DNA from: Oopsacas minuta
Lineage: Eukaryota > Animalia > Porifera
Assembly (NCBI GenBank): GCA_024704765.1
Contig: JAKMXF010000354.1
Span: forward strand, 233,690 to 297,689
DNA length: 64,000 nt
Direction: 5' to 3'
Shown: positions 18,101-64,000 of the stretch, piece by piece
How the letters are laid out: each line of letters starts with the position of its first letter
How positions within the stretch are numbered: the first letter of the stretch is position 1
Translations under genes and position numbers: made by a program
Notes under the pieces: generated by a model
What the model was told of the DNA's origin: nothing
The model's database searches: none
What the model saw: only the letters and a program-made list of their open reading frames with translations

Positions 18101-21100
18101 ATCACGGGTATATTGCAATTCCCCGAATTCTCCACAAGGTATACATTTGAATGATCTTATCAAATCTATGAACCATTGATAAGAACAACAAACTGGTATA
18201 AGAACATTGAGAACTTCAATTATCCTAATAATTTCGAACTTGCCCAAATTTTCAAAGAAGATAATGGAAAAGTTCCTCAGATCAATCACGTTACTTCTGC
18301 TTTCACCAAATATATAGAATAACATACCACTTTTCTCAAAACATATTTCTGGAATTACCGCAACCTGAAATCCGCACTCGATTAAAATGTGTAACAAAGA
18401 ATCTGAGAATGATTGAGGATAGTATCCTCGTAAATCAGACTGGATTGATGGAAGGTTTAAGAAAAAGGTCGTTTGAAAGCTACACCATTCTGTTCCTTTG
18501 TTAGATTTTACGATAAAGAAGTTAAATTGACTATTAATTATCTCATGAGTTATACCCTGAGTAAACCATTTCCAGAGACTGTTACTTGTCAGATCCTTTG
18601 AGAACATATTCAACAATAGACAAGTGTATGTATGATGCATTTCCATAGTATTAATTGACTGCATTTTAATTGCTAGATATTTGTAAAGAGTGAACACAGC
18701 TCGTACTAGTGCATCAGATACAATAGCTTCGTTCCATTTTGTTTTTGCCTCTGCTGTGTCTACTAATCCCTGTCTATCCTGTCTCAACTCAAACATTGCA
18801 TGGCAGTGAAAAGGGAGAGCTATCTGAATAGGGAGTGGAAGGAAGCAATAGAGATTTGAATTAGAGCCAGCTGTTCTATCTTGATCAAAAAGATCTAAGT
18901 TTAACGCTACTCCAGCAAAAGGCAGGAGGGATCTAGTATGTGATAACTTGTTTAGGAGGTTAGCACATTGTTCGCTTCCTGTGGCATAAGTAACAATCCA
19001 ATTGGCATCCGATTTATCAGTTATACTCAATTGATACTCACAAGAAGATGATACTGGTGTAGAATTACAACCATTTATCATATGGATCATATGTTCACGA
19101 TTGGCCTGAAGGAAAGGTTGATTCAGTGGGATATTCGCACTTCGCTTTACACAATGTATACTCTTCATATCTTCAGATCTACTGTCTGAATTGATCACGT
19201 AGATGCCCAGAGAATTTATGTGCTGCATGAAAAATAGAACAGATTCTGCCTCTTTTATGAAATTATCTTGAATTTGATTGATATCTTGTTCATTGAATGT
19301 TTTTAGAGAAATCTTTGATGTGATATTACTAAGCCTTATAGGGAGACGGAATAATGTTCCATTAAAAGGTGAAGGCTTCAGGATATCACACCCGAAAATG
19401 TTTTGATAAGGTGCGAATTGATCTTGATAGATTTGTATATATTTCACTAACCTTTCTTGACAGAAATCTATCTTTACTCCTTTCTTTAGGTAATCTCCGT
19501 GTGGATCTAGAATATGAATATAGTTTCTTGATACAAAGCTAGGTAAGTCAGTGAGATGATAGACCGTACAGAATCCGAGACCAAACTGGCCTATAGAAGT
19601 TACATCATGTGCCTTGGTTGCTGCCTCAATCTTCATGATATTGTCAAAATCTGCATCGAGAAAAGTAGAATTGTTGTAAAAGAGAATGGCAGGACCTTGC
19701 CACACCTCCATCTGTGGGGAAAGTAAGGACATATTAGGATGAATCCTCCAATCGAATACTACATTCATTTCTGTTGCCTTAGCATCATCAGCGTTCTGCA
19801 ACATTTCTTTCAATACATTAATCGTTCCATGATACCCTTCTAATATTCCACGTATTCGGTCAGTAACAGCTATTTTTTGTCCAGTTTCTTCAAACCACAT
19901 TTCACTGGGATCGGTTATCCTCTCATTGAAATGAGACACGCCGAGTCTACGAGCTATATCATTTGATATCTTCTCGTGAACGAAGATAAAATCTTGCTCA
20001 ATCATTGAGCGATTTAACCAAATTTGGTCACAGAAAACTAATTTCTCTTCCTTAGGACTATACATTCTCATGTCTTTACCTGGTATATATACTTCTGCCT
20101 GAGAATTGAGATTAACTATCAGATTGAGAATGTTGATAACTAGCTCAAGTTGTGTTGATGTGAGTGCCGTACAAGTTGAGTTAATTTCAGTTAATATAGA
20201 TGAGAGTTGTGCAGAACTGGGAGACTTTTGTATTGCAAGAAAATCAAAAAACTTGACTGCCCTGTATTTGAGATCTTGTAGCGAATAAATGAAAGGCTTC
20301 ATATCAAAAGGAACTTCGATTACAATTCTATTTTGTGAAACAAATGCAACTTCATCTGGAAGATATATCATGTTCAATGGTATACTTTGAATTTCTGCAA
20401 CCCTCCTGTCCAAAAATAAGTAAATATTCGAGACAATTTGATGGATAAGTTCTGAATCATTCTTCGAAATTCTAGACTTCGTTAGCATGGCAAGATGCTC
20501 TACAACCATCTGAGTCGTAATGTCAGTTAGAAATCCAATTTCACGGATAATTTCCTCGCTCACATCATCTTTCATCATTTGAGAGAGAATTAATGTATTT
20601 TGTACAGAACCTACTAAGTATACATCTTGAGAATTACAAATTAATATTTGTAGAGGAGAACACAATTGAGTGCTGGTAGAGAAATCAACATTTTCTGGCC
20701 AATCACCAGGAATAGACTCAGATATTACAAAATTACTTTGGAAGATTTTAAATAGGGTCTTCCAAGATTCATAATCAAATGTGCTACGATAGACGGACAA
20801 AAATTCAACTAAAGCGCCAAATGTGTCTATCCAATCATTACCTGATTTCGAAACAATGGTTTCAAGACTGTATCTGCAAACTTGTAAACATAACTTCAAA
20901 GAGAGATTTTTATAACATTTCAAACCCAGAGACTTTCTCATAACATCAAAATAATCTTCTAAAATGTTGTGTGGAAATAAACCGCTTGTTTGTGGAGGTA
21001 AAAGCCGATTTAAGATGTGGTCTCTAGGATCAAATAGCTGTGAGGGTGCATATAGTTTAACTCGTCCTTCAATTTCTGTGTTGGCAGAAGAATCTAGTAT

Positions 21101-24100
21101 CCATTCCTTACTCTTGAGATAATCCAGATCAAACAGTTTCAGATTGTCCATTACAAAAACTATTAACTGATTTCTAATTCTAGGATCCTTGTGAGTTTGA
21201 ATAAATGGCATTAAATGATATTTGATAAATGCATCATTAGAGAGTGATTTTGAATTCAGCTTCTTGTAGAGTTGTTTTACAGATGAATTGAATGGAGAAA
21301 TGAAATGAGGAGGGTATGCAATATCAAGAGGGATTTTCAACGGAGGTAGAATGATAATCGAGGAAAGTTTTAACCAATCACCAATTGTATTAGGGAATAA
21401 TGGAAGCTGAGAAATTATTTTGGAGTTTTGTGCATTTGTAATAGGAATTAACAATTCTATCAAGTCAAACTTTAAATTCTCATCAACAGTAGATTCTAGA
21501 GCTAGAATGAACGAATTCAGAACGGCTTTAGACTTCAATGCAATAAGGAGACCCTTAGGAATCGGTGGAAGTACAAACTCGCTAAAACGGACAATAAACT
21601 GTTGTCTGTAACATAAATAACAACCTGATGTCTCAAGTAACTTTTCAAGCTGAATCAAATGACTATCTTCACTGTGTTCAATGTAAGTAGTGCGAGATCT
21701 AAGTGGTAGTAAGGACACGATACCATCATTGATTGAATTCTGTGGTAAGATTGGTAAATGAGAAACAGCCTCTAGGAGAGATTTGGAATTATCAATAAAC
21801 TGGAATAGCTTGACAATCCAAGTTGAAGGCGGGTGTGCGGGGTCTGAGGGCATCCAATCGACAGAATCATTCGATTCAAATCTAAATTTGCCAGAAATTG
21901 ATTGAAATAATAGTTCGGCAAATAACTGAGGATCATTAACTAGTTTCGTGACATCAATCAAATTTAGAGGAGTGCATTTAATTGCTATTGAGAGTAAATT
22001 GGAATGAATCTTGGGAGGGATATAAGGATCGACGAATAAACTCTCTAATCCCGGGAATATATTCATGAGAGTAGAAGTATTAGAGCTAATGTATATTGGT
22101 TTGTGTGCGAATATCTGAGGCTCATCGATACTAGCAATTGGGAGGAGGGGAATACCTTCTAGTATCCTTTTTATTCGCTTGGAAGATTCAATTCCTGAAC
22201 ACATAGTGAGAATTCCTTCTAACAAAGGAATGGCTTTATCTCTAGAAGAGAGAAACTCTCTTAGCTCATTCGAACCGGAAAACCTTTTAAGCAACTCCCT
22301 AATAGCATTCTGATTTATAGTTCTATCACTAATTTGTGACTTTATTCCTGGGATGTTGAGGATAACTTCCTGAATAGATTCAGGAACGTCAATAATTGGT
22401 TCATTAAGTTTCTCCAGCAACTCAAGACATACCTTTTCATTGGTCAGATATTGCTTAGTTAAATTTGGTAAAAAGAATCCATCACATATTGATAGCCATC
22501 TCCCACCCAGTTGCTGAGTATATAGCAAGATATTATGCTTAGAGAGTATCTCTAGTCCCCCACAGAGAACAGAACTGAAGGGGGAATTGTCTGGCTCATG
22601 AGGACTCCAACGTGATAACAACTGATAATGATAAGCTAGAGGAGAAGAGTGTTTCAATGCTTTTATAGTAATAAATAAGAAAACAGCGTAGGCAATAGAC
22701 CCCAGATCTTCAGATAGCAGTAGATTCCACCTGGCTCCTATCTCACTCTCATTATCATCTGAAGGCCAGGGAATAGCACGACGATTAGAACTCAGAGAGA
22801 AGTAACCATGGAAATGAAATGGGAATTTGGAATGTAACTGCGTTGGAAGGAAACAGAAAATCTTACCCGTTGAAATATTTAACTCAATATCTTGATCAAC
22901 TATGAAAGGACATTTGAATACTTCGCTAATCACATCGAATACAGTTGAAGGATTTTCCTTATTCCACTTAAACTGCCACCTGCCACAATTTGTCAGATTG
23001 CTAACTCCTGTAGCAAGGGCTACTCCAACCCATGGAAGATAGTCTAGATGATGATGGTTGTAAAATTGTTGTAGTTTTTTCTTTGTAGCTCCAAAACCAA
23101 GGATATTCAATACCAACCATACAGTTTGCTTCTCTTCACCACCAGATTCACGGGACACAGTCGGGAATAAACACACAAAGATCTTAGTGCTTGATTTGAA
23201 CTCTTCAGAAGAAGCGAATTCTACAATTTCCCTTCTATAACTCTTCACATTATCAAGATAAGCAATAGGAATTTCAGCTTTAAAGAGAGCATGATCTACT
23301 CCACATATTCTATCACATACTTCAATAGAAGTAACGTTCTTCAGGAATAACAGTGCATGCTCTGCTTCACTCATAAGTGGGTTAATTAATTTATTTCTTA
23401 CACTTATTACGTCATAGCAATTCTCACTAATTTCAGATTTTACCTTTCTAAATGGAAACCTAAATATAGTTCCTGGGTAGTCTGCCTGTCCTTCAAATCC
23501 AAAGTAACCTTTGTAACATGAGAGGTGTCCATAAAGTTGTGGATTAGTGCTCAGAGACAGGAGTGGCCAGGATATTCCAGTCTGTCCTTGAGTTGTTAGT
23601 TCCATTAGTGGGTGGTTGATACCGAATTGTTTGTCACTCAGTATCGTAGGACAGTCTATAATATAATATATTTGTTAAATTATAGCAGTATATGGTTAGA
23701 TATATATATATATATATATATATATAATAATCAGGGAAAATATGACAGGTACGCGAACTCCGTACCTCACCAATTTCAAACAGGTACCTCAAATCTTGAC
23801 CCTAGAATGGTGAATAAGTCGGTATCGATGTGAACAGCTATACTTTCGAATAGATGCGATAATTACTATAGAGGTCGCAACCTCTATAAAACTTATTGCA
23901 TAGACAGTGCATTCAAATTGTGATCATGTATGTACTCGCATTCATGTACGTATGTCCAAAGTAAAGAGCAATTCCAATTCTAATAATAATAACCACGGAC
24001 ACCTATATACCCAGACGGGAAACTCTCGATCGCGAAGAAAGTTAAAAGGCCTAACTCAAACGATAATAAGTCCAGTTCTACTTTGAATACCGTATTACCT

Positions 24101-53551: not shown

Positions 53552-55462
53552 TTAGTCAGCTGGAGTTACTGTTTCAGGTTGGTCCTGATTCAGCTTCATG
53601 CTGACAGGGATAGACAAATTATGCTTGAATATGTTTTGTGGATCACTCGCACTCTTTGTCGAAACCAGTTTATCCAGATTATCCTCAAAGTATAATCTCA
53701 GGACTGCTTCCTTAGCCTCATGTTCATTTACTCCATATTCATGGCGTATAACATCTATCATTTCAGTATCAATATAATTGTAATAACATCCATCAACTAT
53801 TCTATCAGGGTCTAGAGGTATTGTGGGATTGGCACATGATGATTTAGGCTTTGTATTAGTTGCCCCACCATCCTCCCTTAACTCACCTGGTATGTAATAG
53901 GGATCAGGCACGCCTCCAGTCTTACTGTAAACTTCTTTAAACATCTGATTGATCCAAAGTATATGAATCCAATCTTGGAACGCATTGAAACTATCGTATG
54001 GTATCTCAATCTCATTCATCTCAATTATAGACTTAGGCACTGGGGCTCTCTTCCAATAGGTTTGGTATTGCAGTTTCATGAATGAGTCTCTTTGAGGAAT
54101 TGCTGTTTCATCTGGAGCTATTGTATTGATATATACTCCATAGCTATCAACCTGGACCAGTGACTGTGTCATGTCCACAAAATTCTTCGTTGCTAAGTCC
54201 TTTACGAAATTATCATAGTATTTATTGGTAGTATCAGGGAAACGACCTGCTAAGTCTGCTAACTCTTTGTTTCCCATGGTTAGGAATCTGTATAGCGCTA
54301 TACATTGATCATCTGGGAAATGTTTACGCATATAAGATGATTTATATTTTCCACATTGATTACTGCCAGAAGAATTTAGTGTTTGTGCAGCCTCAAACCA
54401 TGTCAGCTGTTGGGCAATGTTCAGAATGCCTTTTGTGCTAGGATGGCCTACACCAGGAATTGTAGTACTTTTCAAGGTGATTCCAGCATTTTTCAGGTCA
54501 TTTGTAAATTTTAAGAACTTGTCCTGATAGTAAATCTCATCTTGGTTAAAAACTGATTGGAAAAGGAGAGGTATTTCTCCTGCGGATTGATGCATTAAAG
54601 GTAACAGGGTAAAATAAGGAAAATCATTATTAACCAATTCCCAATACAACTTTAGCATGATTATGAATTTTCCGAGGTCTAATCCATTCCAATCGACAGA
54701 GAGTGTCTCCAAGTAAGCGTACTGAGGCGATTGTGGCAGATTCTCGAAATAGTAACAAGTTATAATCCCGAAGTTTCCACCACCTCCCCCTTTACATGCC
54801 CACAACAATTCCTGGTCACCTTTATCTGTTGAGTCAGCCCTGATCTTCTTTAACTCTAATTTATCGTCTTTATCAACACACAAAATATCTACACCGCTTA
54901 GATAGTCTATTGTCAAACCGAATTTCCTCGACAACAATCCATAACCACCTCCACATATGTGTCCACCTAATCCAACACTATAGCACGATCCACCAGGTAT
55001 CACTAGACCGAATTTCCGATACAACTCTTTCACTAGCCACCAATTGGTGCCACCAGCCTCAGCTCCATATGACTTATCACATCCACTTAACTTAAAGACT
55101 TTGTTCATTAATGAAAGGTCGATAACAGCTAGTATTTCCTTATTATAAACAAAATTCTCATAACAATGACCGCCTCCTTTGATGGAGAAATGATGTCTAT
55201 GCTTAGTGTTCGACAAGACTTCATTTAATGCCTGTTTCACTTCGTCAGTGGTTGTAGGAAGATAGATAACCTCACAATTGTTGGCTTCAAACCGCATATT
55301 AAACCCTTGTATTAATCCGACATACTGTATCGACTGTCTAGTAACCTTCAGACAATCTACCGGATCTACAGTTTCCAGTTGTGGTAGTTGTGTAGGTGGT
55401 AAGGCTGCCTGAGGTGCTGGTGCAATTGTATTACGTGTAGACCCTGTACATATTTGCCCCAT
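53552..55462 (-). CDS. FAD-linked oxidase, BBE/hexose-oxidase family, intronless
   Basis: GFNMRF, GGGHCYENFV, PGGSCYSVGLGGHICGGG, GGGGGNFGIITCYYF, GSNQCGKYKSSYM, KLQYQTYW, GGVPDP, GCYYNY, DPQNIF. This motif series matches Chondrus hexose oxidase and actinobacterial AknOx/Dbv29-type enzymes. Confidence 0.9.
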   Translation of the reverse strand: MGQICTGSTRNTIAPAPQAALPPTQLPQLETVDPVDCLKVTRQSIQYVGLIQGFNMRFEANNCEVIYLPTTTDEVKQALNEVLSNTKHRHHFSIKGGGHCYENFVYNKEILAVIDLSLMNKVFKLSGCDKSYGAEAGGTNWWLVKELYRKFGLVIPGGSCYSVGLGGHICGGGYGLLSRKFGLTIDYLSGVDILCVDKDDKLELKKIRADSTDKGDQELLWACKGGGGGNFGIITCYYFENLPQSPQYAYLETLSVDWNGLDLGKFIIMLKLYWELVNNDFPYFTLLPLMHQSAGEIPLLFQSVFNQDEIYYQDKFLKFTNDLKNAGITLKSTTIPGVGHPSTKGILNIAQQLTWFEAAQTLNSSGSNQCGKYKSSYMRKHFPDDQCIALYRFLTMGNKELADLAGRFPDTTNKYYDNFVKDLATKNFVDMTQSLVQVDSYGVYINTIAPDETAIPQRDSFMKLQYQTYWKRAPVPKSIIEMNEIEIPYDSFNAFQDWIHILWINQMFKEVYSKTGGVPDPYYIPGELREDGGATNTKPKSSCANPTIPLDPDRIVDGCYYNYIDTEMIDVIRHEYGVNEHEAKEAVLRLYFEDNLDKLVSTKSASDPQNIFKHNLSIPVSMKLNQDQPETVTPAD

Positions 55463-57089: not shown

Positions 57090-57523
57090 GGAAATATGTA
57101 ATTATTTTTATTTTTGTTTATTAATTGTCCAAATACATTTAACCACTACACGAAAGGGTTAATTATACACGAAGCAACCTGATTGTCCTTTTGCATTATG
57201 AGCTTGGTGAATGCAATTTTTTCCCTTGTTCATGTTTCATTGTTTTAGTAACCTTCTAAACTGAAACTCTTTCATTCTCTATTGCTTTTTGTACTGAAAT
57301 TCATTCAAATTTCCTTGCGTTCCTTTAACCTGTTCTGAAGAGGTTTTCAAACATGACACAAACATACTAGTCATCATAATTACTATTTAATATAACATAC
57401 TTAAGAATAAGAAATCGTAAAATCGCACTTAAGATTTTATTCTTTATTACGTAAATATTGAAAAACAAATTAATAATATTACAAATTTATTAAAATCCTA
57501 CCAAGTACCAGAATTAGATAATC

Positions 57524-60500
57524 TCAAATAAATTTAGAGATTGCATCTGATAGTCTTAGAGAAATGTCAACAGCATTTGCTGCAACAGTTTTTATCCGAC
57601 AGCTATTGTTCTCAGACTTAACTGCATCTCTAAACTCGTCCTCATTATGAAATAGAGATAATTCACAGAATTTTCTTCCCAAACTAAAGTTATCCCTACA
57701 GTACTCTATACCAGTGGAGATCTTAGCTATAACATCCTTCCACTTGTAGTATTCAACTTGTTGGTTGTGTTTGATTATTTTCATCTTAGTTTTCAGACGT
57801 TCACAAATTGTTGGTATTTCTCCTTCATTAATACTTATAAGAGAGCTTTTCAAGCCATCAGGAAGAAGCAGTCTATAGATATCAGAATCCTTCTGTACAG
57901 GCCTGGCACTCTCACTTCGTAATCTAATATCGTGTGTCTTACTTTGGTCAACAACATTCCTATTACCCACTATGGTTGCTAGCATCCATATGAGAGGACG
58001 CTCCGAGATACTAACAACATGGAGATTGTCATCCAGATTGATTCGTATATCAAAAGAAAATTGCCATTGAATTTCTACACGCCAGGTATAAGATTTACAA
58101 ATGTCTACTTGTCGCACAAATCCACATTCCTCTAATGATTTTACGTATACAGATTTAGTTCTTTCCAATTGAATGTCTTCATCTGTTCCTGTCATTGGCA
58201 GCCCAGGACAGAATGCGCTAGTGGTAGACTTAAGTACCTTTTCATTATATTTAGAAGTCTTTTTAATAATTTTGTTAAAGGATTTGTCATGACTCGGTTG
58301 CTGTGATATTGTAGAGTTTGTCTGTAATTCCTTCTTATCTTCAGCTGAATCTATCTGACGATTTCCTTTTACTAAGCATTTTTCGAATTCATCCAAGTAT
58401 AACGAATCTCCAACCTCTTGAAAAGAATCAGGACCATCTAATATATAGAAAAAGCCGAATCTTGATTTAAATTTGAGATTTTTAAGAAGATCCTTATTAT
58501 TCGACGGAAATCGTGACAATTGATTCCAGAGGAGAGTTTGTATCCTATTTACGCCCTCGCTCTTCCAATTAGGGTTAACCCTTTGTTCTGCAGAAATTAG
58601 AAAGCTCTTATGGTTATTAGTATGAATCTGCTTGCAACAAGCTTGTTCAAAACTGGACAGTTTGACACGACATTTCGCTGAATATTCGGACATAATAATT
58701 AGCGTACTTCCATCTAGTATATAATGGTAAGAATTTGATTTGTATTTCCTGGTTAAGGCTGAATTTGATTCCATTAGCGATATTTCAGTAGCTAATTTGT
58801 GTATAGCACTGGCAGAGCCCTGAGCAGTGAGGAGTAGATTACGCCCTGATGATTCTATCTTAATCAAGGCACCTGTTGCAGTGTTCCAAGATTTTTCATA
58901 GAATCGTGTAGATGACCGAATACGATCACTCATAAATGGAGTAAATCGCTTTGCAAATGTTAACTGAACTTGAACACGTTCAAACAACTTAAATATATTC
59001 CTAGTATACGCCAAACAGTGCCAACCTTGAAATAAAAGTGCTGATATTTTATTGAGTGCAGTTACACTGATCGTATGAATAGGATCCCCCTGTATAGGCC
59101 ATGTATATACTATTTCATTCACACTCTCAGACGTTATCTTATAACCTCTACGAAAGAATTCTTCTAACATTAATCCTAACTTCTTCTCAATCTCTGCATT
59201 CATTAACAAGTTAGTCAAAGATTGCAAAATAGTGTTATCACATTCTAAATCACTTGTCACAGTTTCTGGTTTACATAGCATCTCATCATAGATGTATAGG
59301 ATCAGAGCTTCAAATTCTGCGGTTAGAATAAGCCCAGTGCTTTTGGGTGAAGTGTGACACTTTAATATACCAATATGTCTACCCCAGTGAATGAGAATCC
59401 AGAAAAATGCGAAGAATATACCTCCAGTAGTACGATAGAGTTGTAGAATATATTTTGATTTGAGTACTCCATCGCTCTCTATACTTACATCTACACTTAT
59501 GTCTGATCGTGTGTCCATTTCAGAATCCATGGTTAGTGTAATGATGGGAAAATCTAGGTTAAACTTTTCTATTTTAGAAAGAGCTACCTCCTCAAGCGAA
59601 GGTGATACAAACAACCGGAGAAGGTGGAGTCGTGTTTTTTTAATATCCATTTTTGCAAGATTATCTTTTCCGATAAAATCAATTCCAAAATTCGTTAGTG
59701 AGATGGAAATATCTAAATCAGATTCCAACTCACAAAGAAATTTTGAAACTGAACCGAATACCTCTACATTGAATACTTTACCATTTTCAGGAATATTTAT
59801 TGTTTTTTCTTGTTGAATACAAAAGTCATTAATAGCTGAGCTTATCTTCCCTAATAAACACATCTTAGCATTTACATTTGTGTGAATAAATTCGCTTTGT
59901 TGCATGATATATTCCCTCGCTGTGCTGCCAATGGAGCAGTGTAAATCTAGTTCAGTATGGTTTGGTTGTTTTGCTAATAAATCACATAATTCTTTTCTCA
60001 TTATCCAGGCAAAAGATAGAAAAGTTGTCTCTTCACTCTGTTGTTGCTGATACACGGTTAGGTACCAGGCAGCTGCTTTTTTAGCATAACAATCTAGAGG
60101 AGTATTCCTTTCGAATATTTCTCTAAATTCTTCTGTGAGATAGCGCATAGCGGTTATAAGCGCACTTGTAACTTTGTTTTTATCAGCAGACAAGAAGGGG
60201 TGACACTTAATGATTAAACCAAGTATAACTTCAGCTTCTGTCTCTATACCAAATGATAACATTATTCTCTGTAACGCATTAGAATACTCGAAATATCTAA
60301 TTTTAGCATCTTGCATGTAACCTTCGTGACCTGGGATTTGGAATATCTCTAATGGAATGCTATGTGGTATTTTCTGTTTAAAAGTTTGTTTGTTGTAGTA
60401 GTTTAATATATTCTGCCATTCATTAGTCTCAAAACACACAGATTTAGCCAATTGATAGAGTTCTCCTAACAACTTTTCCGAAGGATAAGCAGTTGATTCC

Positions 60501-63500
60501 GTCTTCTCCATAAAATCAGGATAGCCCTTTTCCTTAATTAATACTTTAGCTTCATCGGGTATAGTTGGAGTTATTCCGGTCTTAGGAGAGTCTACAGATA
60601 GAGAAGCTAATCTAGCAAGTTGTATTGACAACTCATCTCTTGAACCATTTTCCTTCATATCGCTAATAGCCACGTGATAATGCGATATTATTCCTAACAG
60701 ATCGTTACTTATAATTTTACAATATGACTCAGCTAATATAGTTTGTATGTTGTCATGCATATGTAATGGAATTTTGGTGTCTATAGGATTTTTTCTCTCT
60801 GGTTCCTTACTCTTTAGCTGTTCTTTGTACTCATTTAGTACATTATCATAGTTTAATGAAGGGAATATTGCACTAATCGGCGGAATAAGATCTTTATCCC
60901 AAATAATACCAAACTCATCTCCATCCAAATCCCCTCCCCCAGTACAAGCAGGCAGTGACGTACTGCCTTTACTAGGAAATACTATAACATTGTGAAGATG
61001 ATGTAATTCTATCTTATCTACAGCAGTAGGAGTAAGGAGATCTCCAGGATGAAGACACGGGTTCTTATACACTAAAATACGTCCTGTAAGAGGTGCCTTA
61101 GTTGATGTATCTTCAAAAGTTACATATACCTCTCTATCCTCTAATATTCCTATAGGATCAGGTATACCCATTAGTAAACAGCCGTTTTTCAGAGGAATAT
61201 GAAACTTTTTTATCAAATTTTGAATTTTAAAGGTGTATATACATCTGAGTAAAGAGAGGTGGAAAGGCTCAGATAGAATATCAATACAGTTAATTGCAGT
61301 ATTTGAATTGTGAGGGAGATGAGAGGTAAGCTCAGTACTTGCTATAGTAATATCTGTGAATATTCGTACGTTTCTTTCAAGTACTTCTTTGTAAATAGCT
61401 CTTAGACGAGGTTTAGGATCCCAATTCTGTTCGCTACAATCTTCTAAACTAGTCAATAAAGTCATCATCTGAGTGTTAAGATGTAAATCATTATATTTGC
61501 CTAATTTCACTAAACAAAGAGTAGATTGTGTCCATTCAATCTTCTTCATTGACTTTCTATAGAGTATATCGCAGTGTAGTAACCCGCTGTTGAAATCAGT
61601 ATCAGTATCAGCATCAACTATAGTGAATACTCCCTTTAGACCAGCTAGCCTCACTTGTATAGCTGAAATATTCTGTAATGAGGCATTTCCTACAATTTCT
61701 GAATTATCAAATATCTTCTCAGCTACAGATCTTCTAATTTTACCATTCCCATCAGTCAAGTTAAGACCATTGTCAGCAAACAGATCAGATAAACAGTGAG
61801 TATTAGCCTCAGGTATATCACAGATAGGATGATCTGAAGTACAAAACAATCCTAGTCTAGACAGATACTTAGTCTCATTAGCAACAATAGAATCTCCCAT
61901 CAACTCATGTCTCATATTTCTTAACGTTTCTGAAACACAACCATCTCTAATGTGAATAAATATCGCTCGCTTACTTCTTAATTGACTCCCACTACAAACC
62001 AAAAAGTAGAAATTCAACCCATTAATTGTAACACCGTTAATAATTATGTTCTTAACACGATCAATGACGTCAGAACTCTTAAGCGCCTCTCCGTGTTCTT
62101 CTCTGAAAGCTAAATTCAGGAATCTCTCTTTCGGGAATTTCCTATAAAGTCTGTTACGTTGAGTAAATACAGATTGTAGAGGAATTACAGTAGAGGGAGT
62201 TACCATAGCACACTCGATGTAGCAATAGTTATCATGAGAAGAGGCTGGGCTAGATAGAGGGTAGTCTTTGAGAGTGTCCAAATATTTATCGAAAGAGCTC
62301 TGCAAATCAAAAAAGTAATAAGTTGTATCTTTACATCTCAAGGATAGAAGATAAGAGAATGTTTTAGACAGAGCCCTAATAAGAGATAAATCTGCTACAT
62401 AAATCTCCTTAGTAAATTTACGAATAGTTTCTTCAGGTAGACAAATATTTCTTATAGATTTTAATACATAAAATTCCCATAGACAGTCTTGCATTTCTTT
62501 ATCCCAGTATAGAGAATTATCTGATAAAATTATTGCCTCAGTCTCCATGGAGGTACACTCAATAATACGTGAATCATATACTGGAACAGATAGAGTATTT
62601 GGTGAGTGGAGAAATATCCATAATTTACTCCAATTAGACGTCTTGTATGCAAGTGAGATCCCGAAGACAGGAGACTCTCCGAAGAATCTCAGGAATGAAC
62701 AGTTATCACATGACAACATTTCTCCAGATTGAGATAGGACTTTAGGACAGAAGGAAAGAGGTAGGTATAGCATGACGTCATTCTCTCTCCAATCAGCTAG
62801 CATAAATAGAAAGATAGAAGCGAATGGAATCTCAATTGTCAACCGAGAATCTGCCTGGTTACGGATAGTTATGTGTATGGTGCGGTCAGATGAGAGTTCA
62901 AAAATTCCTTTCTCTCCGAAAGTATTCGCTTCTAATTGCTCAGTTACCTGAAAAGTATGTTTATCGTTAAATTTTCCCCATGAGATCTTATTTACAGTCC
63001 ACTTTGTTTGATATTTCATTTCTTTATCTAGAGGTACTCGAACCCTTGTCCACACCTCAGGACCTCCGTTTCCGATAGAGAATGACCACTGCACAGTCAA
63101 GAGTTTGTAACGCTCATAAATGTTTGGTTTTTGAGTTTGCAAACCCAAATTTAATAGAGAATCTTCGAATGGGAATATTCCATTAGATTTCCAACGAGAA
63201 TTACAAGCAGCTTGTTCAATACGCTTAACTTTCAAGAAATATTTTTCAAATAGAATTTTAGCAATATTATCCTGAATATCGAATAATTCATGTGTTCCTG
63301 TTAAGTAGAATTCGACTGCACATTCTGTCGATGACAATATGTTACATTTCTGACTGTGGTCAGAGCAAGAAACTGTATTTTCAATATCTTTTTGAATATT
63401 TTCTATGATATTTTCTGTGAATGGAGAAGGAAATTTAGTCTCTGAATGGTGTTCTTTTAAAACAGATTTTACAGTATATTCTTGAGCTTGGATTTCTTCA

Positions 63501-64000
63501 AATGTACGATTCTCATCTTCAGATAGAATCAAAATAAACCTGCTATTATCCCATTTTCTAGCTCTCCCTTTACTCTGTTTATAAGAAGTTAGAGATTTTA
63601 AGCCATTAAATCTGATAACGACATCACACACAGGGATATCAAGACCTTCTTCCAATACAGACGTGCTAACCAGGAGATTACACTTCCCGTTACGGAAATT
63701 CTCAATTATTTCTTCCTGATCATTAACCCAGTTCATACCAAATGGTCCTGACTGTCCAACTATTTTCAAAGGAGAAAATTTCTGATTAACCTTCTGGTCT
63801 TCCTTCAGAACAGTAGCTAAAATAGAAGCCATACGGCGGGTCTCAACGAATATAATAATTTTAGAATTATCAGAAATTTCATTGAGGATATTAAACAGCT
63901 CTTGTAGTCTTGGAGAGAAGCTCGGCTGATGATCCAATCCCTCAAATATATCCATATCTCGTAGCTTCTGGTGAGCATATGTAACTCCTAACATCTCTGT
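57524..64000 (-). CDS. Multidomain protein, 5' end outside window: Dicer/RLR-type helicase C + cellular RNA-dependent RNA polymerase + Cid1/TRF4-type nucleotidyltransferase + KH-like and unknown C-terminal region
   Basis: Frame open to the window edge. Helicase: IIFVETR, LLVSTSVLEEGLDIP, SYKQSKGRAR. RdRP: QVRLAGLKG, YKNPCLHPGD, GGDLDGD (60917-60931), SVDSPKTG, YPDFMEK, KAAAWY, FLSFAW. NTase: FGS...SDLDISI (DLD 59711-59719), VDVSI (D 59489-59491), LIHWGRHIGI, LGLMLEEFF. Confidence 0.93.
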   Translation of the reverse strand, partial: TEMLGVTYAHQKLRDMDIFEGLDHQPSFSPRLQELFNILNEISDNSKIIIFVETRRMASILATVLKEDQKVNQKFSPLKIVGQSGPFGMNWVNDQEEIIENFRNGKCNLLVSTSVLEEGLDIPVCDVVIRFNGLKSLTSYKQSKGRARKWDNSRFILILSEDENRTFEEIQAQEYTVKSVLKEHHSETKFPSPFTENIIENIQKDIENTVSCSDHSQKCNILSSTECAVEFYLTGTHELFDIQDNIAKILFEKYFLKVKRIEQAACNSRWKSNGIFPFEDSLLNLGLQTQKPNIYERYKLLTVQWSFSIGNGGPEVWTRVRVPLDKEMKYQTKWTVNKISWGKFNDKHTFQVTEQLEANTFGEKGIFELSSDRTIHITIRNQADSRLTIEIPFASIFLFMLADWRENDVMLYLPLSFCPKVLSQSGEMLSCDNCSFLRFFGESPVFGISLAYKTSNWSKLWIFLHSPNTLSVPVYDSRIIECTSMETEAIILSDNSLYWDKEMQDCLWEFYVLKSIRNICLPEETIRKFTKEIYVADLSLIRALSKTFSYLLSLRCKDTTYYFFDLQSSFDKYLDTLKDYPLSSPASSHDNYCYIECAMVTPSTVIPLQSVFTQRNRLYRKFPKERFLNLAFREEHGEALKSSDVIDRVKNIIINGVTINGLNFYFLVCSGSQLRSKRAIFIHIRDGCVSETLRNMRHELMGDSIVANETKYLSRLGLFCTSDHPICDIPEANTHCLSDLFADNGLNLTDGNGKIRRSVAEKIFDNSEIVGNASLQNISAIQVRLAGLKGVFTIVDADTDTDFNSGLLHCDILYRKSMKKIEWTQSTLCLVKLGKYNDLHLNTQMMTLLTSLEDCSEQNWDPKPRLRAIYKEVLERNVRIFTDITIASTELTSHLPHNSNTAINCIDILSEPFHLSLLRCIYTFKIQNLIKKFHIPLKNGCLLMGIPDPIGILEDREVYVTFEDTSTKAPLTGRILVYKNPCLHPGDLLTPTAVDKIELHHLHNVIVFPSKGSTSLPACTGGGDLDGDEFGIIWDKDLIPPISAIFPSLNYDNVLNEYKEQLKSKEPERKNPIDTKIPLHMHDNIQTILAESYCKIISNDLLGIISHYHVAISDMKENGSRDELSIQLARLASLSVDSPKTGITPTIPDEAKVLIKEKGYPDFMEKTESTAYPSEKLLGELYQLAKSVCFETNEWQNILNYYNKQTFKQKIPHSIPLEIFQIPGHEGYMQDAKIRYFEYSNALQRIMLSFGIETEAEVILGLIIKCHPFLSADKNKVTSALITAMRYLTEEFREIFERNTPLDCYAKKAAAWYLTVYQQQQSEETTFLSFAWIMRKELCDLLAKQPNHTELDLHCSIGSTAREYIMQQSEFIHTNVNAKMCLLGKISSAINDFCIQQEKTINIPENGKVFNVEVFGSVSKFLCELESDLDISISLTNFGIDFIGKDNLAKMDIKKTRLHLLRLFVSPSLEEVALSKIEKFNLDFPIITLTMDSEMDTRSDISVDVSIESDGVLKSKYILQLYRTTGGIFFAFFWILIHWGRHIGILKCHTSPKSTGLILTAEFEALILYIYDEMLCKPETVTSDLECDNTILQSLTNLLMNAEIEKKLGLMLEEFFRRGYKITSESVNEIVYTWPIQGDPIHTISVTALNKISALLFQGWHCLAYTRNIFKLFERVQVQLTFAKRFTPFMSDRIRSSTRFYEKSWNTATGALIKIESSGRNLLLTAQGSASAIHKLATEISLMESNSALTRKYKSNSYHYILDGSTLIIMSEYSAKCRVKLSSFEQACCKQIHTNNHKSFLISAEQRVNPNWKSEGVNRIQTLLWNQLSRFPSNNKDLLKNLKFKSRFGFFYILDGPDSFQEVGDSLYLDEFEKCLVKGNRQIDSAEDKKELQTNSTISQQPSHDKSFNKIIKKTSKYNEKVLKSTTSAFCPGLPMTGTDEDIQLERTKSVYVKSLEECGFVRQVDICKSYTWRVEIQWQFSFDIRINLDDNLHVVSISERPLIWMLATIVGNRNVVDQSKTHDIRLRSESARPVQKDSDIYRLLLPDGLKSSLISINEGEIPTICERLKTKMKIIKHNQQVEYYKWKDVIAKISTGIEYCRDNFSLGRKFCELSLFHNEDEFRDAVKSENNSCRIKTVAANAVDISLRLSDAISKFI

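What the first reader, a model, noticed from the sequence alone, without database searches (positions are those of the whole stretch)
57524..64000. Single polypeptide fusing RLR/Dicer-type helicase, RdRP and a terminal nucleotidyltransferase: candidate all-in-one RNA sensing, tailing and amplifying enzyme
Seen in sequence: one uninterrupted frame of >2158 aa carries a helicase C domain with Dicer/RIG-I-style motifs (EEGLDIP, QSKGRAR), a complete cellular RdRP with intact DLDGD, and directly after it a Cid1/TRF4-like NTase. Established: in C. elegans these activities are separate cooperating proteins. The helicase DRH-3 partners the RdRPs RRF-1/EGO-1, and the NTase RDE-3/MUT-2 adds poly(UG) tails that recruit RdRP. 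Helicase-RdRP fusions are known (e.g. Dictyostelium, some invertebrates); I do not recall a description of the added NTase, though I could not check this. Inference: a Rosetta-stone fusion in which target RNA is recognised, 3'-tailed and copied in cis for antiviral or transposon silencing in an early-branching animal.
Basis: partly seen in the sequence, partly recalled or inferred. Interest (0 to 1): 0.93.

Follow-up and report, generated by a model that had tools for sequence, protein, structure and literature searches.

The report
Sponge helicase–RdRP–tailing enzyme, one chain
A glass-sponge gene encodes one 2606-residue protein joining an RNA helicase, an RNA-copying polymerase, an RNA-tailing enzyme and a previously unremarked triphosphate-tunnel-like domain. 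It belongs to an ancient family found across eukaryotes, so it is not a sponge or animal invention.

Summary
The minus-strand frame 57527-64000 is open. It is the last 2158 residues of a single-exon, 2606-aa gene of Oopsacas minuta.

Modules in order:
- a four-cysteine domain resembling the RIG-I C-terminal domain (outside the window)
- a Dicer/RIG-I-type DExH helicase
- a cellular RdRP with DLDGD
- a Cid1/Trf4/GLD-2-type nucleotidyltransferase. The fold match is confident, and GS, DxD and the third Asp are invariant in 27 close and 10 distant homologues.
- new here: a KH-like domain plus a triphosphate-tunnel barrel. The barrel is most like the trypanosome guide-RNA 5'-triphosphate binder RESC1/RESC2 and lacks Cet1's metal-binding glutamates.

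The whole architecture is collinear in cnidarians, an acoel, dinoflagellates, Diplonema, a liverwort and oomycetes.

Helicase-RdRPs have been described since 2002. The nucleotidyltransferase domain was noted once in passing, in a 2023 Amoebozoa preprint, and is flagged by Pfam. I found no functional study of it and no mention of the C-terminal barrel.

I could obtain no RNA evidence. The scan noted the same architecture in a paralogue on other DNA of this genome (s1-226612).

Verdict: a new member of a known family whose published domain description is incomplete. It most likely works as a single-chain equivalent of the multi-protein RdRP complexes.

The parts
57524..64000 (-). Coding sequence for residues 449-2606 of a single-exon 2606-aa gene, plus its stop codon (57524-57526). 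The first 448 codons lie beyond the window end.
   Evidence: open frame identical to P0001 449-2606. The gene is 7821 nt with no internal stop in contig JAKMXF010000354.1.
63560..63901 (-). Helicase C-terminal RecA domain (Hel2) of a Dicer/RIG-I-type DExH helicase. Contains EEGLDIP (63632-63652) and QSKGRAR (63557-63577).
   Evidence: Pfam Helicase_C E 1.3e-18. For P0001 1-660 the best solved relatives are an ancestral Dicer helicase (E 8.7e-44, one stretch 163-630), LGP2, Dicer, MDA5 and RIG-I. The motifs are invariant.
62204..63559 (-). Region of about 450 residues between the helicase and the RdRP core, with no confident assignment. It may hold PH-like/RRM-like N-terminal RdRP domains.
   Evidence: No Pfam hit. 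The only lead is a weak language-model match to the plant RDR2 PH-like/RRM domains (score 0.71). Scattered invariant residues.
60452..62203 (-). Cellular RNA-dependent RNA polymerase core (PF05183), with the catalytic DLDGD at 60917-60931.
   Evidence: Pfam RdRP E 1.4e-106 over model positions 1-580 of 582. D1472, D1474 and D1476 are invariant in 27 + 11 sequences.
59978..60451 (-). RdRP 'head' region joining the RdRP core to the nucleotidyltransferase. Boundaries are approximate.
   Evidence: PF26253 RdRP_head is precomputed for this protein. Its position is inferred as the stretch between the PF05183 end and the start of the NTase model.
58985..59977 (-). Cid1/Trf4/GLD-2-type terminal nucleotidyltransferase, catalytic plus central domain. 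FGS...SDLD lies at 59711-59758; the third catalytic Asp lies within SVDVS at 59483-59497.
   Evidence: AlphaFold model pLDDT 84. Foldseek PDB hits are all terminal nucleotidyltransferases, E 1.6e-7. Swiss-Prot models: Cid13, Cid1, GLD-4, HESO1, TENT4. G1864, S1865, D1876, D1878 and D1952 are invariant. The Pfam PF22600 hit is sub-threshold here but above threshold in the paralogue P0015, Hydra, Sanderia and Riccia.
58766..58963 (-). KH-like (type I, beta-alpha-alpha-beta-beta-alpha) domain without the GXXG loop.
   Evidence: In the model of P0001 2120-2606, residues 5-79 match hnRNP K, PCBP, Nova and PNPase KH domains at Z about 8. The loop reads SDRIRSS instead of GXXG.
57527..58708 (-). Triphosphate-tunnel (Cet1/RESC-like) beta-barrel with a disordered insert. 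The beta-1 equivalent is KFKSRFG (58454-58474), where Cet1 has ExExKFG. The conserved HDIRLRSE lies at 57911-57934.
   Evidence: VIA-align: RESC1-RESC2 8cdp_A Z 22.6, Cet1 1d8h Z 17.5, Pct1 15.5, T. cruzi Cet1 14.8, mimivirus triphosphatase 10.4. Foldseek E 1.2e-9. No Pfam or PDB sequence match. Conservation.

Best explanation
What the gene is. It is an intact, single-exon Oopsacas minuta gene for a 2606-aa member of the ancient helicase-RdRP family. That family includes Dictyostelium RrpA-C, Phytophthora RDR and the Hydra/Nematostella RdRPs.

Shown here:
- Six modules lie in one chain: a zinc domain resembling the RIG-I C-terminal domain, a Dicer/RIG-I-type DExH helicase, a cellular RdRP, a Cid1/Trf4-type terminal nucleotidyltransferase, a KH-like domain, and a Cet1/RESC-like triphosphate-tunnel barrel.
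- The catalytic residues of all three enzymes are invariant.
- The barrel lacks the metal-binding glutamates of active tunnel triphosphatases.

Inferred mechanism. The protein works as a single-chain equivalent of the multi-protein RdRP complexes (S. pombe Rdp1-Hrr1-Cid12, Tetrahymena Rdr1-Rdn).
1. The zinc domain and helicase select and remodel an RNA.
2. The nucleotidyltransferase adds untemplated nucleotides to a 3' end, most likely that of the template, which favours or regulates initiation.
3. The RdRP copies the template into a complementary strand that starts with a 5'-triphosphate.
4. The KH-like domain and the catalytically dead tunnel hold a 5'-triphosphate end, either of the nascent strand or of a foreign template, as RESC2 holds guide RNA.
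5. The output is dsRNA or small RNA for Dicer/Argonaute-type defence against viruses or transposons.
For: Frame and gene.

Domain identities:
- Pfam.
- Helicase relatives in the PDB.
- NTase model and fold matches.
- C-terminal model and fold matches.

Conservation:
- GKT, DECHH, QxxGRAR, DLDGD, GS/DxD/D and the four N-terminal cysteines are conserved across 27 close and 10 distant homologues. All are invariant in the 11 distant-set sequences. In the 27, two of the cysteines are only nearly invariant.
- The full-length protein is collinear in sponges, cnidarians, an acoel, dinoflagellates, Diplonema, a liverwort and oomycetes. This argues that the fusion is selected as a unit.

Supporting literature:
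- RESC2's tunnel binds the 5'-triphosphate of guide RNA and is inactive because it lost the Cet1 glutamates (PMC10201420). The same loss is seen here.
- The P. sojae family member was confirmed as one intronless cDNA by overlapping RT-PCR and RACE (PMC4791657).
- Three of the four Nematostella RdRPs are induced by poly(I:C) (PMC8476169; PMC12768352).
Against: - No RNA or protein evidence exists for this sponge gene. The only public runs holding it behave like DNA of the sequenced sample.
- No enzyme activity of any family member's NTase or tunnel domain has been measured.
- The Pfam NTase score of this copy is below threshold.
- In Nematostella no RdRP-type secondary siRNAs were found, so the output and role may differ from classical amplification.
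- In a Dictyostelium family member the NTase aspartates are replaced (NLN), so the family can function without NTase catalysis.
- The 5'-triphosphate-binding role of the barrel rests on fold similarity alone. No sequence match supports it.
- Haplotype differences in the gene are mostly non-synonymous (21 of 29). This could mean relaxed constraint.
Confidence: 0.6

Rival explanations
1. The protein is an innate-immune sensor or effector rather than a small-RNA amplifier. The RIG-I-like end-recognition domain, the helicase and the triphosphate tunnel detect foreign 5'-triphosphate RNA. The polymerase and tailing activities then mark, sequester or destroy that RNA, or make a signalling dsRNA, without producing secondary siRNAs.
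For: - The helicase is of the RIG-I-like-receptor/Dicer type, and the N-terminal zinc domain gives sub-threshold RIG-I_C-RD hits.
- Nematostella RdRPs are induced by poly(I:C), yet no secondary siRNAs appear even after RppH treatment.
- The sponge has three lineage-specific paralogues, and the haplotypes differ by an excess of amino-acid changes, clustered just upstream of Helicase_C. This is a pattern common in immune genes.
Against: - Family members that have been studied are tied to siRNA pathways. Dictyostelium RrpC is needed for 5' spreading of siRNAs (PMC3661229).
- No signalling domain (CARD, Death, TIR) was found in the 2606 residues.
- The family also occurs in unicellular eukaryotes that have no interferon-like signalling.
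Confidence: 0.2
2. Only the helicase and RdRP are functional. The nucleotidyltransferase, the KH-like domain and the tunnel domain are structural scaffolds or regulatory pseudo-enzymes.
For: - In the Dictyostelium homologue the NTase DxD is NLN and the third Asp is absent.
- The KH-like domain lacks GXXG.
- The tunnel lacks the metal-binding glutamates.
- The Pfam NTase score is sub-threshold here.
Against: - G-S, D-x-D and the third Asp are invariant in all 27 + 11 aligned sequences, which span sponges to oomycetes. That is hard to explain for a dead active site.
- The fold includes both the catalytic and the central domain, with high model confidence.
Confidence: 0.12
3. The long frame does not give one protein. 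Splicing, internal initiation or proteolysis releases separate helicase, RdRP and NTase products.
For: No transcript or protein data could be obtained for this gene. Hydra RefSeq lists shorter isoforms of 2299 and 2342 aa.
Against: - The frame is 7821 nt, uninterrupted, in a genome that averages 1.59 introns per gene.
- Order and length are preserved in dozens of species.
- The P. sojae homologue was confirmed as one cDNA.
Confidence: 0.05

Closest known systems
Helicase-RdRP family: Dictyostelium RrpA/RrpB/RrpC, Phytophthora RDR, Hydra and Nematostella RDRs (Martens 2002 as cited in, and Bollmann 2016 = PMC4791657)
   Same: Full-length collinear homology. It runs from the N-terminal DExH helicase with Helicase_C through the RdRP. 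It also covers the NTase and, except in Dictyostelium, the C-terminal modules.
   Different: Published descriptions list only the helicase and RdRP domains. In the Dictyostelium protein examined the NTase catalytic aspartates are lost, and the C-terminal region is not detectably similar. The sponge copy keeps them all.
S. pombe RDRC (Rdp1 + Hrr1 helicase + Cid12 NTase) and Tetrahymena Rdr1-Rdn1/2 complexes (from my own knowledge, not re-read here)
   Same: The same three activities (helicase, cellular RdRP, Cid1-family nucleotidyltransferase) work together on one RNA.
   Different: There they are separate polypeptides, and as I recall Hrr1 is not a Dicer/RIG-I-type helicase. Here they form one chain, with an added zinc end-recognition-like domain and a tunnel domain.
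C. elegans RRF-1/EGO-1 + DRH-3 + RDE-3/MUT-2
   Same: A Dicer-related helicase, an RdRP and a tailing NTase cooperate. DRH structures are among the PDB relatives of this helicase.
   Different: They are separate proteins. The nematode RdRPs are the outgroup in the quick tree and carry different flanking domains. There is no evidence here for poly(UG) specificity.
RESC1-RESC2 guide-RNA binding complex of trypanosomes (PDB 8cdp, 8fn6; PMC10201420)
   Same: It is the best structural match of the C-terminal barrel (Z 22.6). Both have a Cet1-like tunnel that has lost metal-binding glutamates. RESC2 binds an RNA 5'-triphosphate.
   Different: No detectable sequence similarity. RESC1/2 are stand-alone mitochondrial proteins that form a domain-swapped heterodimer. 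Ligand binding by the sponge domain is untested.
Cet1/Pct1/mimivirus RNA triphosphatases (triphosphate tunnel metalloenzymes)
   Same: The same beta-barrel tunnel fold (Z 10-17.5).
   Different: The ExExK metal-binding motif on beta-1 reads K-F-K-S/T-R in sponges and is non-acidic in all relatives checked. A metal-dependent triphosphatase activity is therefore unlikely.
Cid1, Trf4/TENT4, GLD-2, HESO1, TUT4/7 terminal nucleotidyltransferases
   Same: Two-domain fold and the catalytic hG[GS]...DxD...D signature.
   Different: About 12-15% identity. No PF03828 PAP-associated hit. Nucleotide preference is unknown. The domain is embedded in a 2606-aa protein.

Membership tests
Cellular (eukaryotic) RdRP, PF05183 | Full-length match to the RdRP profile above the curated threshold | tested here: met
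   358 bits against a cut-off of 23.8, model positions 1-580 of 582.
Cellular (eukaryotic) RdRP, PF05183 | Catalytic DxDGD motif | tested here: met
   DLDGD at window 60917-60931. All three Asp are invariant in 27 + 11 homologues.
Dicer/RIG-I-like (RLR) SF2 helicase | Motif I GxGKT, motif II DECH, motif VI QxxGRxR | tested here: met
   GKT 192-194, DECHH 287-291 and QSKGRAR 590-596 are invariant. Motifs I and II lie outside the window, in P0001.
Dicer/RIG-I-like (RLR) SF2 helicase | Closest relatives are Dicer/RLR helicases, including the insertion between the two RecA domains | tested here: met
   phmmer against the PDB finds an ancestral Dicer helicase at E 8.7e-44 as one stretch over 163-630, then LGP2, DCL1, Dicer, MDA5 and RIG-I. 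The fold of the insertion was not modelled.
Cid1/Trf4/GLD-2 terminal nucleotidyltransferase (Pol beta superfamily) | hG[GS] ... DxD ... third Asp catalytic signature | tested here: met
   FGS(x10)DLD and SVDVS. G1864, S1865, D1876, D1878 and D1952 are invariant.
Cid1/Trf4/GLD-2 terminal nucleotidyltransferase (Pol beta superfamily) | Two-lobed fold: catalytic palm plus central/PAP-associated domain | tested here: met
   Model pLDDT 84. All 50 listed PDB matches are from this family, aligned over about 360 columns with TM about 0.55. Swiss-Prot models agree.
Cid1/Trf4/GLD-2 terminal nucleotidyltransferase (Pol beta superfamily) | Pfam profile match above the curated threshold | tested here: inconclusive
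   PF22600 scores 20.3 bits against a cut-off of 27 in this copy. It is above threshold in the paralogue P0015 (27.4), Sanderia (31.7), Hydra (41.2) and Riccia (50.2). There is no PF03828 hit.
Cid1/Trf4/GLD-2 terminal nucleotidyltransferase (Pol beta superfamily) | Untemplated 3' nucleotide addition and its nucleotide specificity | not testable with these tools
   Needs a biochemical assay. The uridine-selecting residue could not be read because model coordinates are not exported.
Triphosphate tunnel metalloenzyme (Cet1-like RNA triphosphatase) | Antiparallel beta-barrel tunnel fold | tested here: met
   Z 17.5 to Cet1, 15.5 to Pct1, 14.8 to T. cruzi Cet1, 9.0 to YgiF.
Triphosphate tunnel metalloenzyme (Cet1-like RNA triphosphatase) | Metal-binding glutamates (ExExK on beta-1, plus a glutamate on the last strand) | tested here: not met
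   The beta-1 equivalent is K-F-K-S-R-F-G, non-acidic in all 27 + 10 relatives. This mapping rests on the motif pattern and the strand position in the fold alignment, not on a residue-level superposition. I therefore do not file it as an active member. It resembles the inactive RESC1/2.
RESC1/RESC2-like 5'-triphosphate-binding tunnel | Structural similarity higher than to the catalytic tunnel enzymes | tested here: met
   Z 22.6, 21.6 and 21.3 to the RESC chains, against 17.5 to Cet1. Foldseek E 1.2e-9.
RESC1/RESC2-like 5'-triphosphate-binding tunnel | Selective binding of 5'-triphosphate RNA through basic tunnel residues | not testable with these tools
   Conserved basic residues exist (R2295, R2449, R2474, R2476), but binding needs experiment. 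There is no sequence homology.
Type I KH domain | beta-alpha-alpha-beta-beta-alpha fold | tested here: met
   Model residues 9-74. Z about 8-8.6 to hnRNP K, PCBP2, Nova and PNPase KH domains. Z about 8 is near the level the tool calls common.
Type I KH domain | GXXG nucleic-acid-binding loop | tested here: not met
   The loop between the two helices reads SDRIRSS. Hence 'KH-like'.
RIG-I C-terminal domain / Yippee-Mis18 zinc domain | Two CxxC pairs and a profile match | tested here: inconclusive
   C3, C6, C56 and C59 are conserved. Of 27 members, 19 hit Yippee-Mis18 and 8 hit RIG-I_C-RD, all below threshold (best E 1.5e-4 and 2e-4). The domain was not modelled and lies outside the window.
Helicase-RdRP family (Dictyostelium Rrp, oomycete RDR, cnidarian RDR) | Collinear full-length homology with named members | tested here: met
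   An alignment of 11 species gives 36% mean column identity, with invariant residues in every module. Dictyostelium is hit at E 1.5e-279. Tree.

The most novel reading that the evidence does not exclude
The ancestral eukaryotic helicase-RdRP was a self-contained RNA-silencing 'factory'. Two of its modules have gone unnoticed: an active terminal nucleotidyltransferase, and a catalytically dead triphosphate tunnel. The tunnel captures the 5'-triphosphate end of the RdRP product or of a foreign template. It belongs to the same structural lineage as the trypanosome guide-RNA binders RESC1/RESC2, which were thought to have no relatives outside kinetoplastids. It also shares that fold with the uncharacterised fungal DUF7905 and plant DUF7903 proteins.
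Probability: 0.3. Interest if true: 0.75.

Novelty: new member of a known kind. Interest (0 to 1): 0.6.

Why it matters
What cellular RdRPs do in animals outside nematodes is an open question. RdRP genes are common in animals, but secondary siRNAs were found neither in amphioxus (PMC6396948) nor in Nematostella (PMC12768352).

This family keeps an active-looking tailing enzyme and a probable 5'-triphosphate-binding tunnel welded to the helicase and polymerase, from sponges to oomycetes. That gives three concrete handles:
- mutate the tailing site;
- test binding of 5'-ppp RNA ends;
- look for tailed templates rather than only for 22G-like small RNAs.

It is also natural 'Rosetta-stone' support for the helicase-RdRP-NTase partnership, which was established biochemically in fission yeast, Tetrahymena and C. 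elegans. Finally, it suggests a possible evolutionary source for the RESC1/2 fold.

Tried and rejected
- RNA evidence. Two run searches found only runs of unknown kind from one sample. Laying them gave uniform depth, long contigs spanning neighbouring DNA and a second haplotype, with no joints. This is DNA-like, so it says nothing about transcripts.
- Sequence-only searches of the PDB:
  - The C-terminal profile gave only chance-level RAD51D hits.
  - The NTase profile gave only the GS-DxD motif in CutA and MEAT1.
  - The N-terminal profile gave weak Mis18 and MsrB hits.
- Pfam on the C-terminal region of all 27 members found nothing consistent.
- The review by Burroughs, Ando and Aravind (2014, PMC4066877), the paper most likely to have catalogued RdRP fusions, is not held. 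Prior description of the NTase fusion there cannot be excluded.
- Contamination or recent horizontal transfer is rejected. The gene sits in a 1.1-Mb sponge contig among ordinary animal genes such as NELF-B, MGAT4, a BRD7/9-like gene and DHX37. Its three paralogues form one clade with other presumed sponge sequences.
- An active Cet1-type triphosphatase is rejected because the glutamates are absent.
Only a weak lead to the RDR2 PH-like/RRM domains exists.
- The quick tree (LG+G4) has long branches and compositional heterogeneity. I draw no conclusion from the position of dinoflagellates and Diplonema between sponges and cnidarians.

Full report
**The observation**

The minus strand of window 57521-64000 translates as one frame of 2158 codons. 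It ends at the stop 57524-57526 and is still open at the window edge. A database search found the full protein, P0001 (2606 aa, 100% identical). The window encodes its residues 449-2606.

The encoding contig is JAKMXF010000354.1 of assembly GCA_024704765.1. Accession JAKMXF is the whole-genome project of the glass sponge Oopsacas minuta (PMC10280926). In that contig the gene is one ORF of 7821 nt with no internal stop. An in-frame stop lies two codons upstream of the ATG. The genome averages 1.59 introns per gene, and most neighbouring genes in the window are also long uninterrupted ORFs of ordinary eukaryotic type: an AP-complex medium subunit, DHX37, NELF-B, an AAA ATPase, MGAT4 and a bromodomain protein.

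**Domain content from sequence**

Pfam results for the whole protein:

| Family | P0001 residues | E-value | Note |
|---|---|---|---|
| DEAD/ResIII | 170-327 | about 1e-17 | outside the window |
| Helicase_C | 482-595 | 1e-18 | |
| RdRP PF05183 | 1048-1631 | 1e-106 | full model length |
| MTPAP-like_central PF22600 | 1858-1971 | 6e-4 to 2e-3 | below the curated threshold |

PF26253 RdRP_head is precomputed for the stretch after the RdRP core.

The helicase is of the Dicer/RIG-I type. Its best solved relatives are a reconstructed ancestral Dicer helicase (E 8.7e-44, one stretch over residues 163-630, which covers the region between the two RecA domains), then LGP2, plant DCL1, Dicer, MDA5, RIG-I and nematode Dicer-related helicases.

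The first 165 or so residues carry four conserved cysteines (C3, C6, C56, C59). Across the 27 family members they give sub-threshold hits to Yippee-Mis18 (19 members) and to the RIG-I C-terminal domain (8 members). From my own knowledge, these families share one zinc-binding fold. This agrees with an earlier scan note (s1-201583). I did not model this domain, and it lies outside the window.

**The nucleotidyltransferase is real**

I aligned 27 full-length homologues, cut out P0001 1790-2140 and predicted its structure (pLDDT 84, pTM 0.84).

- All 50 listed Foldseek matches in the PDB are terminal nucleotidyltransferases of the Cid1/Trf4/GLD-2 kind: Cid1, CutA, TUT7, MEAT1, GLD-2, Trf4, T. brucei TUT4, mtPAP, TUT1 and URT1. 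The best E is 1.6e-7, and the matches align over both lobes.
- Against Swiss-Prot models the list is Cid13, Cid1, GLD-4, Trf5, Cid11, HESO1 and TENT4A/B. No subfamily stands out.
- The signature FGS-x10-DLD and a third Asp in SVDVS are invariant in all 27 sequences and in 11 sequences spanning eukaryotes.
- The same Pfam family passes its threshold in the paralogue P0015, Sanderia, Hydra, Rhopilema and Riccia.

The last 487 residues have no Pfam match in any of the 27 members and no PDB sequence match. A model of P0001 2120-2606 (pLDDT 77, pTM 0.71, with two disordered inserts) resolves two parts.

- Residues 9-74 have the beta-alpha-alpha-beta-beta-alpha topology of a type I KH domain. Z is about 8 to hnRNP K, PCBP2, Nova and PNPase KH domains, a level the tool warns is not far above background. 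The GXXG loop is absent.
- Residues 94-487 form a beta-barrel. Its best matches are the trypanosome RESC1-RESC2 complex (Z 22.6, 21.6, 21.3), followed by the tunnel RNA triphosphatases Cet1 (17.5), Pct1 (15.5), T. cruzi Cet1 (14.8), the mimivirus enzyme (10.4), YgiF and an archaeal tunnel enzyme (Foldseek E 1.2e-9).

The RESC paper shows the following (PMC10201420):
- RESC1/2 are inactive because two of the three metal-binding glutamates of Cet1 (E305, E307, E496) are missing.
- The authors found no sequence relatives outside kinetoplastids.

In the sponge family the strand that corresponds by pattern and position to Cet1 beta-1 (ExExKFG) reads K-F-K-S/T-R-F-G. It is non-acidic in every distant relative as well. 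Several basic residues facing the same side are conserved: R2295, R2449, R2474 and R2476. I therefore read this as an inactive, ligand-binding tunnel and not as a triphosphatase. This residue mapping is by motif and strand order, because model coordinates cannot be exported.

In the AlphaFold cluster library the same fold appears in several places:
- a 983-aa NTase-containing protein (E 2e-34);
- a 1169-aa entry named RNA-dependent RNA polymerase (organism withheld by the tool);
- the kinetoplastid guide-RNA binding subunit 2;
- uncharacterised fungal DUF7905 proteins;
- uncharacterised DUF7903 proteins (plants, from my recollection of the accessions, since the tool withheld organisms).

**How widespread is the architecture?**

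A profile of the NTase-to-C-terminus region was searched against 1.84 billion representatives. It found 242 proteins at E ≤ 1e-3. Many are 2000-2900 aa long with the match at about 1750-2600, the same position as here. Named members:

| Group | Species |
|---|---|
| Cnidarians | Hydra vulgaris (two loci), Sanderia malayensis, Rhopilema esculentum |
| Acoel | Convolutriloba macropyga |
| Dinoflagellates | Prorocentrum cordatum, Polarella glacialis (name attached to the same cluster), Effrenium voratum |
| Euglenozoa | Diplonema papillatum |
| Liverwort | Riccia sorocarpa |
| Oomycete | Plasmopara halstedii RDR1 |

Further points:
- Pfam confirms DEAD + Helicase_C + RdRP + PF22600 in each member tested except one unnamed relative, P0172, which lacks the PF22600 hit.
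- An 11-species full-length alignment has invariant residues in every module, including the four N-terminal cysteines and G2297, Y2300, R2449 and W2453 of the barrel.
- O. minuta itself has three paralogues, about 52% identical, which form one clade in a quick tree. One of them appears to be the earlier scan note s1-226612.
- A Dictyostelium discoideum family member (2381 aa) still gives a PF22600 hit. Its DxD reads NLN, the third Asp is gone, and the region beyond is not recognisably similar. The best-studied species thus has a degenerate version.

**What the literature says**

- Bollmann et al. 2016 (PMC4791657) describe the DEAD-helicase + Helicase_C + RdRP arrangement in peronosporomycete oomycetes, Dictyostelium, Hydra and Nematostella. 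They show that these helicases form one clade distinct from the Dicer helicases. The words 'nucleotidyl' and 'C-terminal' do not occur in that paper. They confirmed the P. sojae RDR as an intronless cDNA by overlapping RT-PCR and RACE.
- Pinzon et al. 2019 do not mention helicase or NTase fusions.
[quoted passage not shown] The NTase has therefore been seen, without comment on function.
- No paper in the searchable library combines 'triphosphate tunnel' with RdRP and RNA interference.
- The 2014 comparative-genomics review by Burroughs, Ando and Aravind could not be read.
- In Nematostella, three of four RdRPs rise after poly(I:C). No secondary siRNAs were detected even after RppH treatment.

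**Most likely mechanism**

Shown: six modules in one frame, three intact catalytic centres, a dead tunnel, and conservation of the whole arrangement since early eukaryotes.

Inferred: the protein is a one-chain counterpart of the multi-protein RdRP complexes. From my own knowledge these are Rdp1-Hrr1-Cid12 in S. pombe, Rdr1-Rdn1/2 in Tetrahymena, and RRF-1/EGO-1 with DRH-3 and RDE-3 in C. elegans. The proposed sequence is:
1. The zinc domain and helicase choose and unwind a substrate.
2. The NTase tails a 3' end, which favours or gates RdRP initiation.
3. The RdRP makes a complementary strand beginning with a triphosphate.
4. The KH-like domain and tunnel grip a 5'-triphosphate end.

Which end is held, which nucleotide is added and what the final product is remain unknown. 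A rival I take seriously (0.2) is that the machine is an RLR-like antiviral sensor or effector whose output is not amplified siRNA.

**Limits**

I could not obtain transcript evidence. The only runs holding the sequence come from one sample. They show flat depth and long contigs, plus a second haplotype, which is DNA-like behaviour.

That haplotype differs at 29 positions in 6 kb, of which 21 change the amino acid. Eight of those fall in residues 460-482, just before Helicase_C. This may reflect diversifying selection, relaxed constraint or a collapsed paralogue, and I did not resolve which.

**Verdict**

The evolutionary framing (an invention of an early-branching animal, an unreported NTase) is not correct. 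The gene is a new member of a known and ancient helicase-RdRP family.

The useful novelty lies in the family's incomplete description: a conserved, apparently active tailing domain that has never been studied, and a RESC-like triphosphate tunnel that I could not find mentioned anywhere.

Noticed in passing
window 58001-64000, especially 63901-63966: Contigs of runs X2-X4 carry a second haplotype with 29 differences in 6 kb. Of these, 21 are non-synonymous and 8 synonymous. Eight amino-acid changes are packed into P0001 residues 460-482, just upstream of Helicase_C. This could be diversifying selection, relaxed constraint or a collapsed paralogue.
   Followed up: partly
P0218 (Dictyostelium discoideum, 2381 aa), residues about 1947-2063: The Dictyostelium family member keeps the NTase palm (PF22600, 28.8 bits), but its catalytic DxD reads NLN and the third Asp is missing. 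The C-terminal KH/tunnel region is not recognisably similar. The model organism for this family therefore has a degenerate tail.
   Followed up: partly
P0046, P0051, P0052, P0067, P0203-P0210 (2308-2364 aa; those included in the quick tree cluster with cnidarians): A set of homologues ends at profile position about 553. That is inside the disordered insert of the tunnel domain, so they would lack the second half of the barrel. This is either a real truncation in that lineage or gene models cut at an intron.
   Followed up: no
AlphaFold cluster hits of model mfec6ca82d0c1: The C-terminal barrel also matches uncharacterised fungal DUF7905 proteins, DUF7903 proteins (plants by my recollection of the accessions) and a Trichoplax entry named 'decapping nuclease'. 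E-values are 1e-7 to 1e-14 and TM scores are modest (0.3-0.5). This may be a broad, undescribed group of RESC/Cet1-like tunnel proteins.
   Followed up: no
window 9116-23605, minus strand: An uninterrupted ORF of 4829 codons, the longest in the window. I did not examine it.
   Followed up: no
window 53552-55462, minus strand: A 636-aa ORF with FAD_binding_4 and a berberine-bridge (BBE) domain lies directly downstream of the RdRP gene. Another scan note already flags it as a possible horizontal acquisition.
   Followed up: no
same genome, other pieces (scan notes s1-230912, s1-226637, s1-226678): The genome also holds RdRP genes fused to a Upf1/ZNFX1-type SF1 helicase and a P-loop domain. This is a different RdRP-helicase fusion, like amphioxus BL02069 with AAA_12 (PMC6396948) and P0035.
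   Followed up: no
window 59460-59816, plus strand: A 118-codon TTG-initiated ORF lies antisense to the NTase coding region. There is no support for it, and it is probably a chance frame.
   Followed up: no
quick tree: Dinoflagellate and Diplonema sequences sit between the sponge clade and the cnidarian + acoel clade. The sponge protein is about as similar to the dinoflagellate proteins (28-29%) as to the cnidarian ones (29%). Long branches and compositional bias make this unreliable, but transfer between animals and protists was not excluded.
   Followed up: partly
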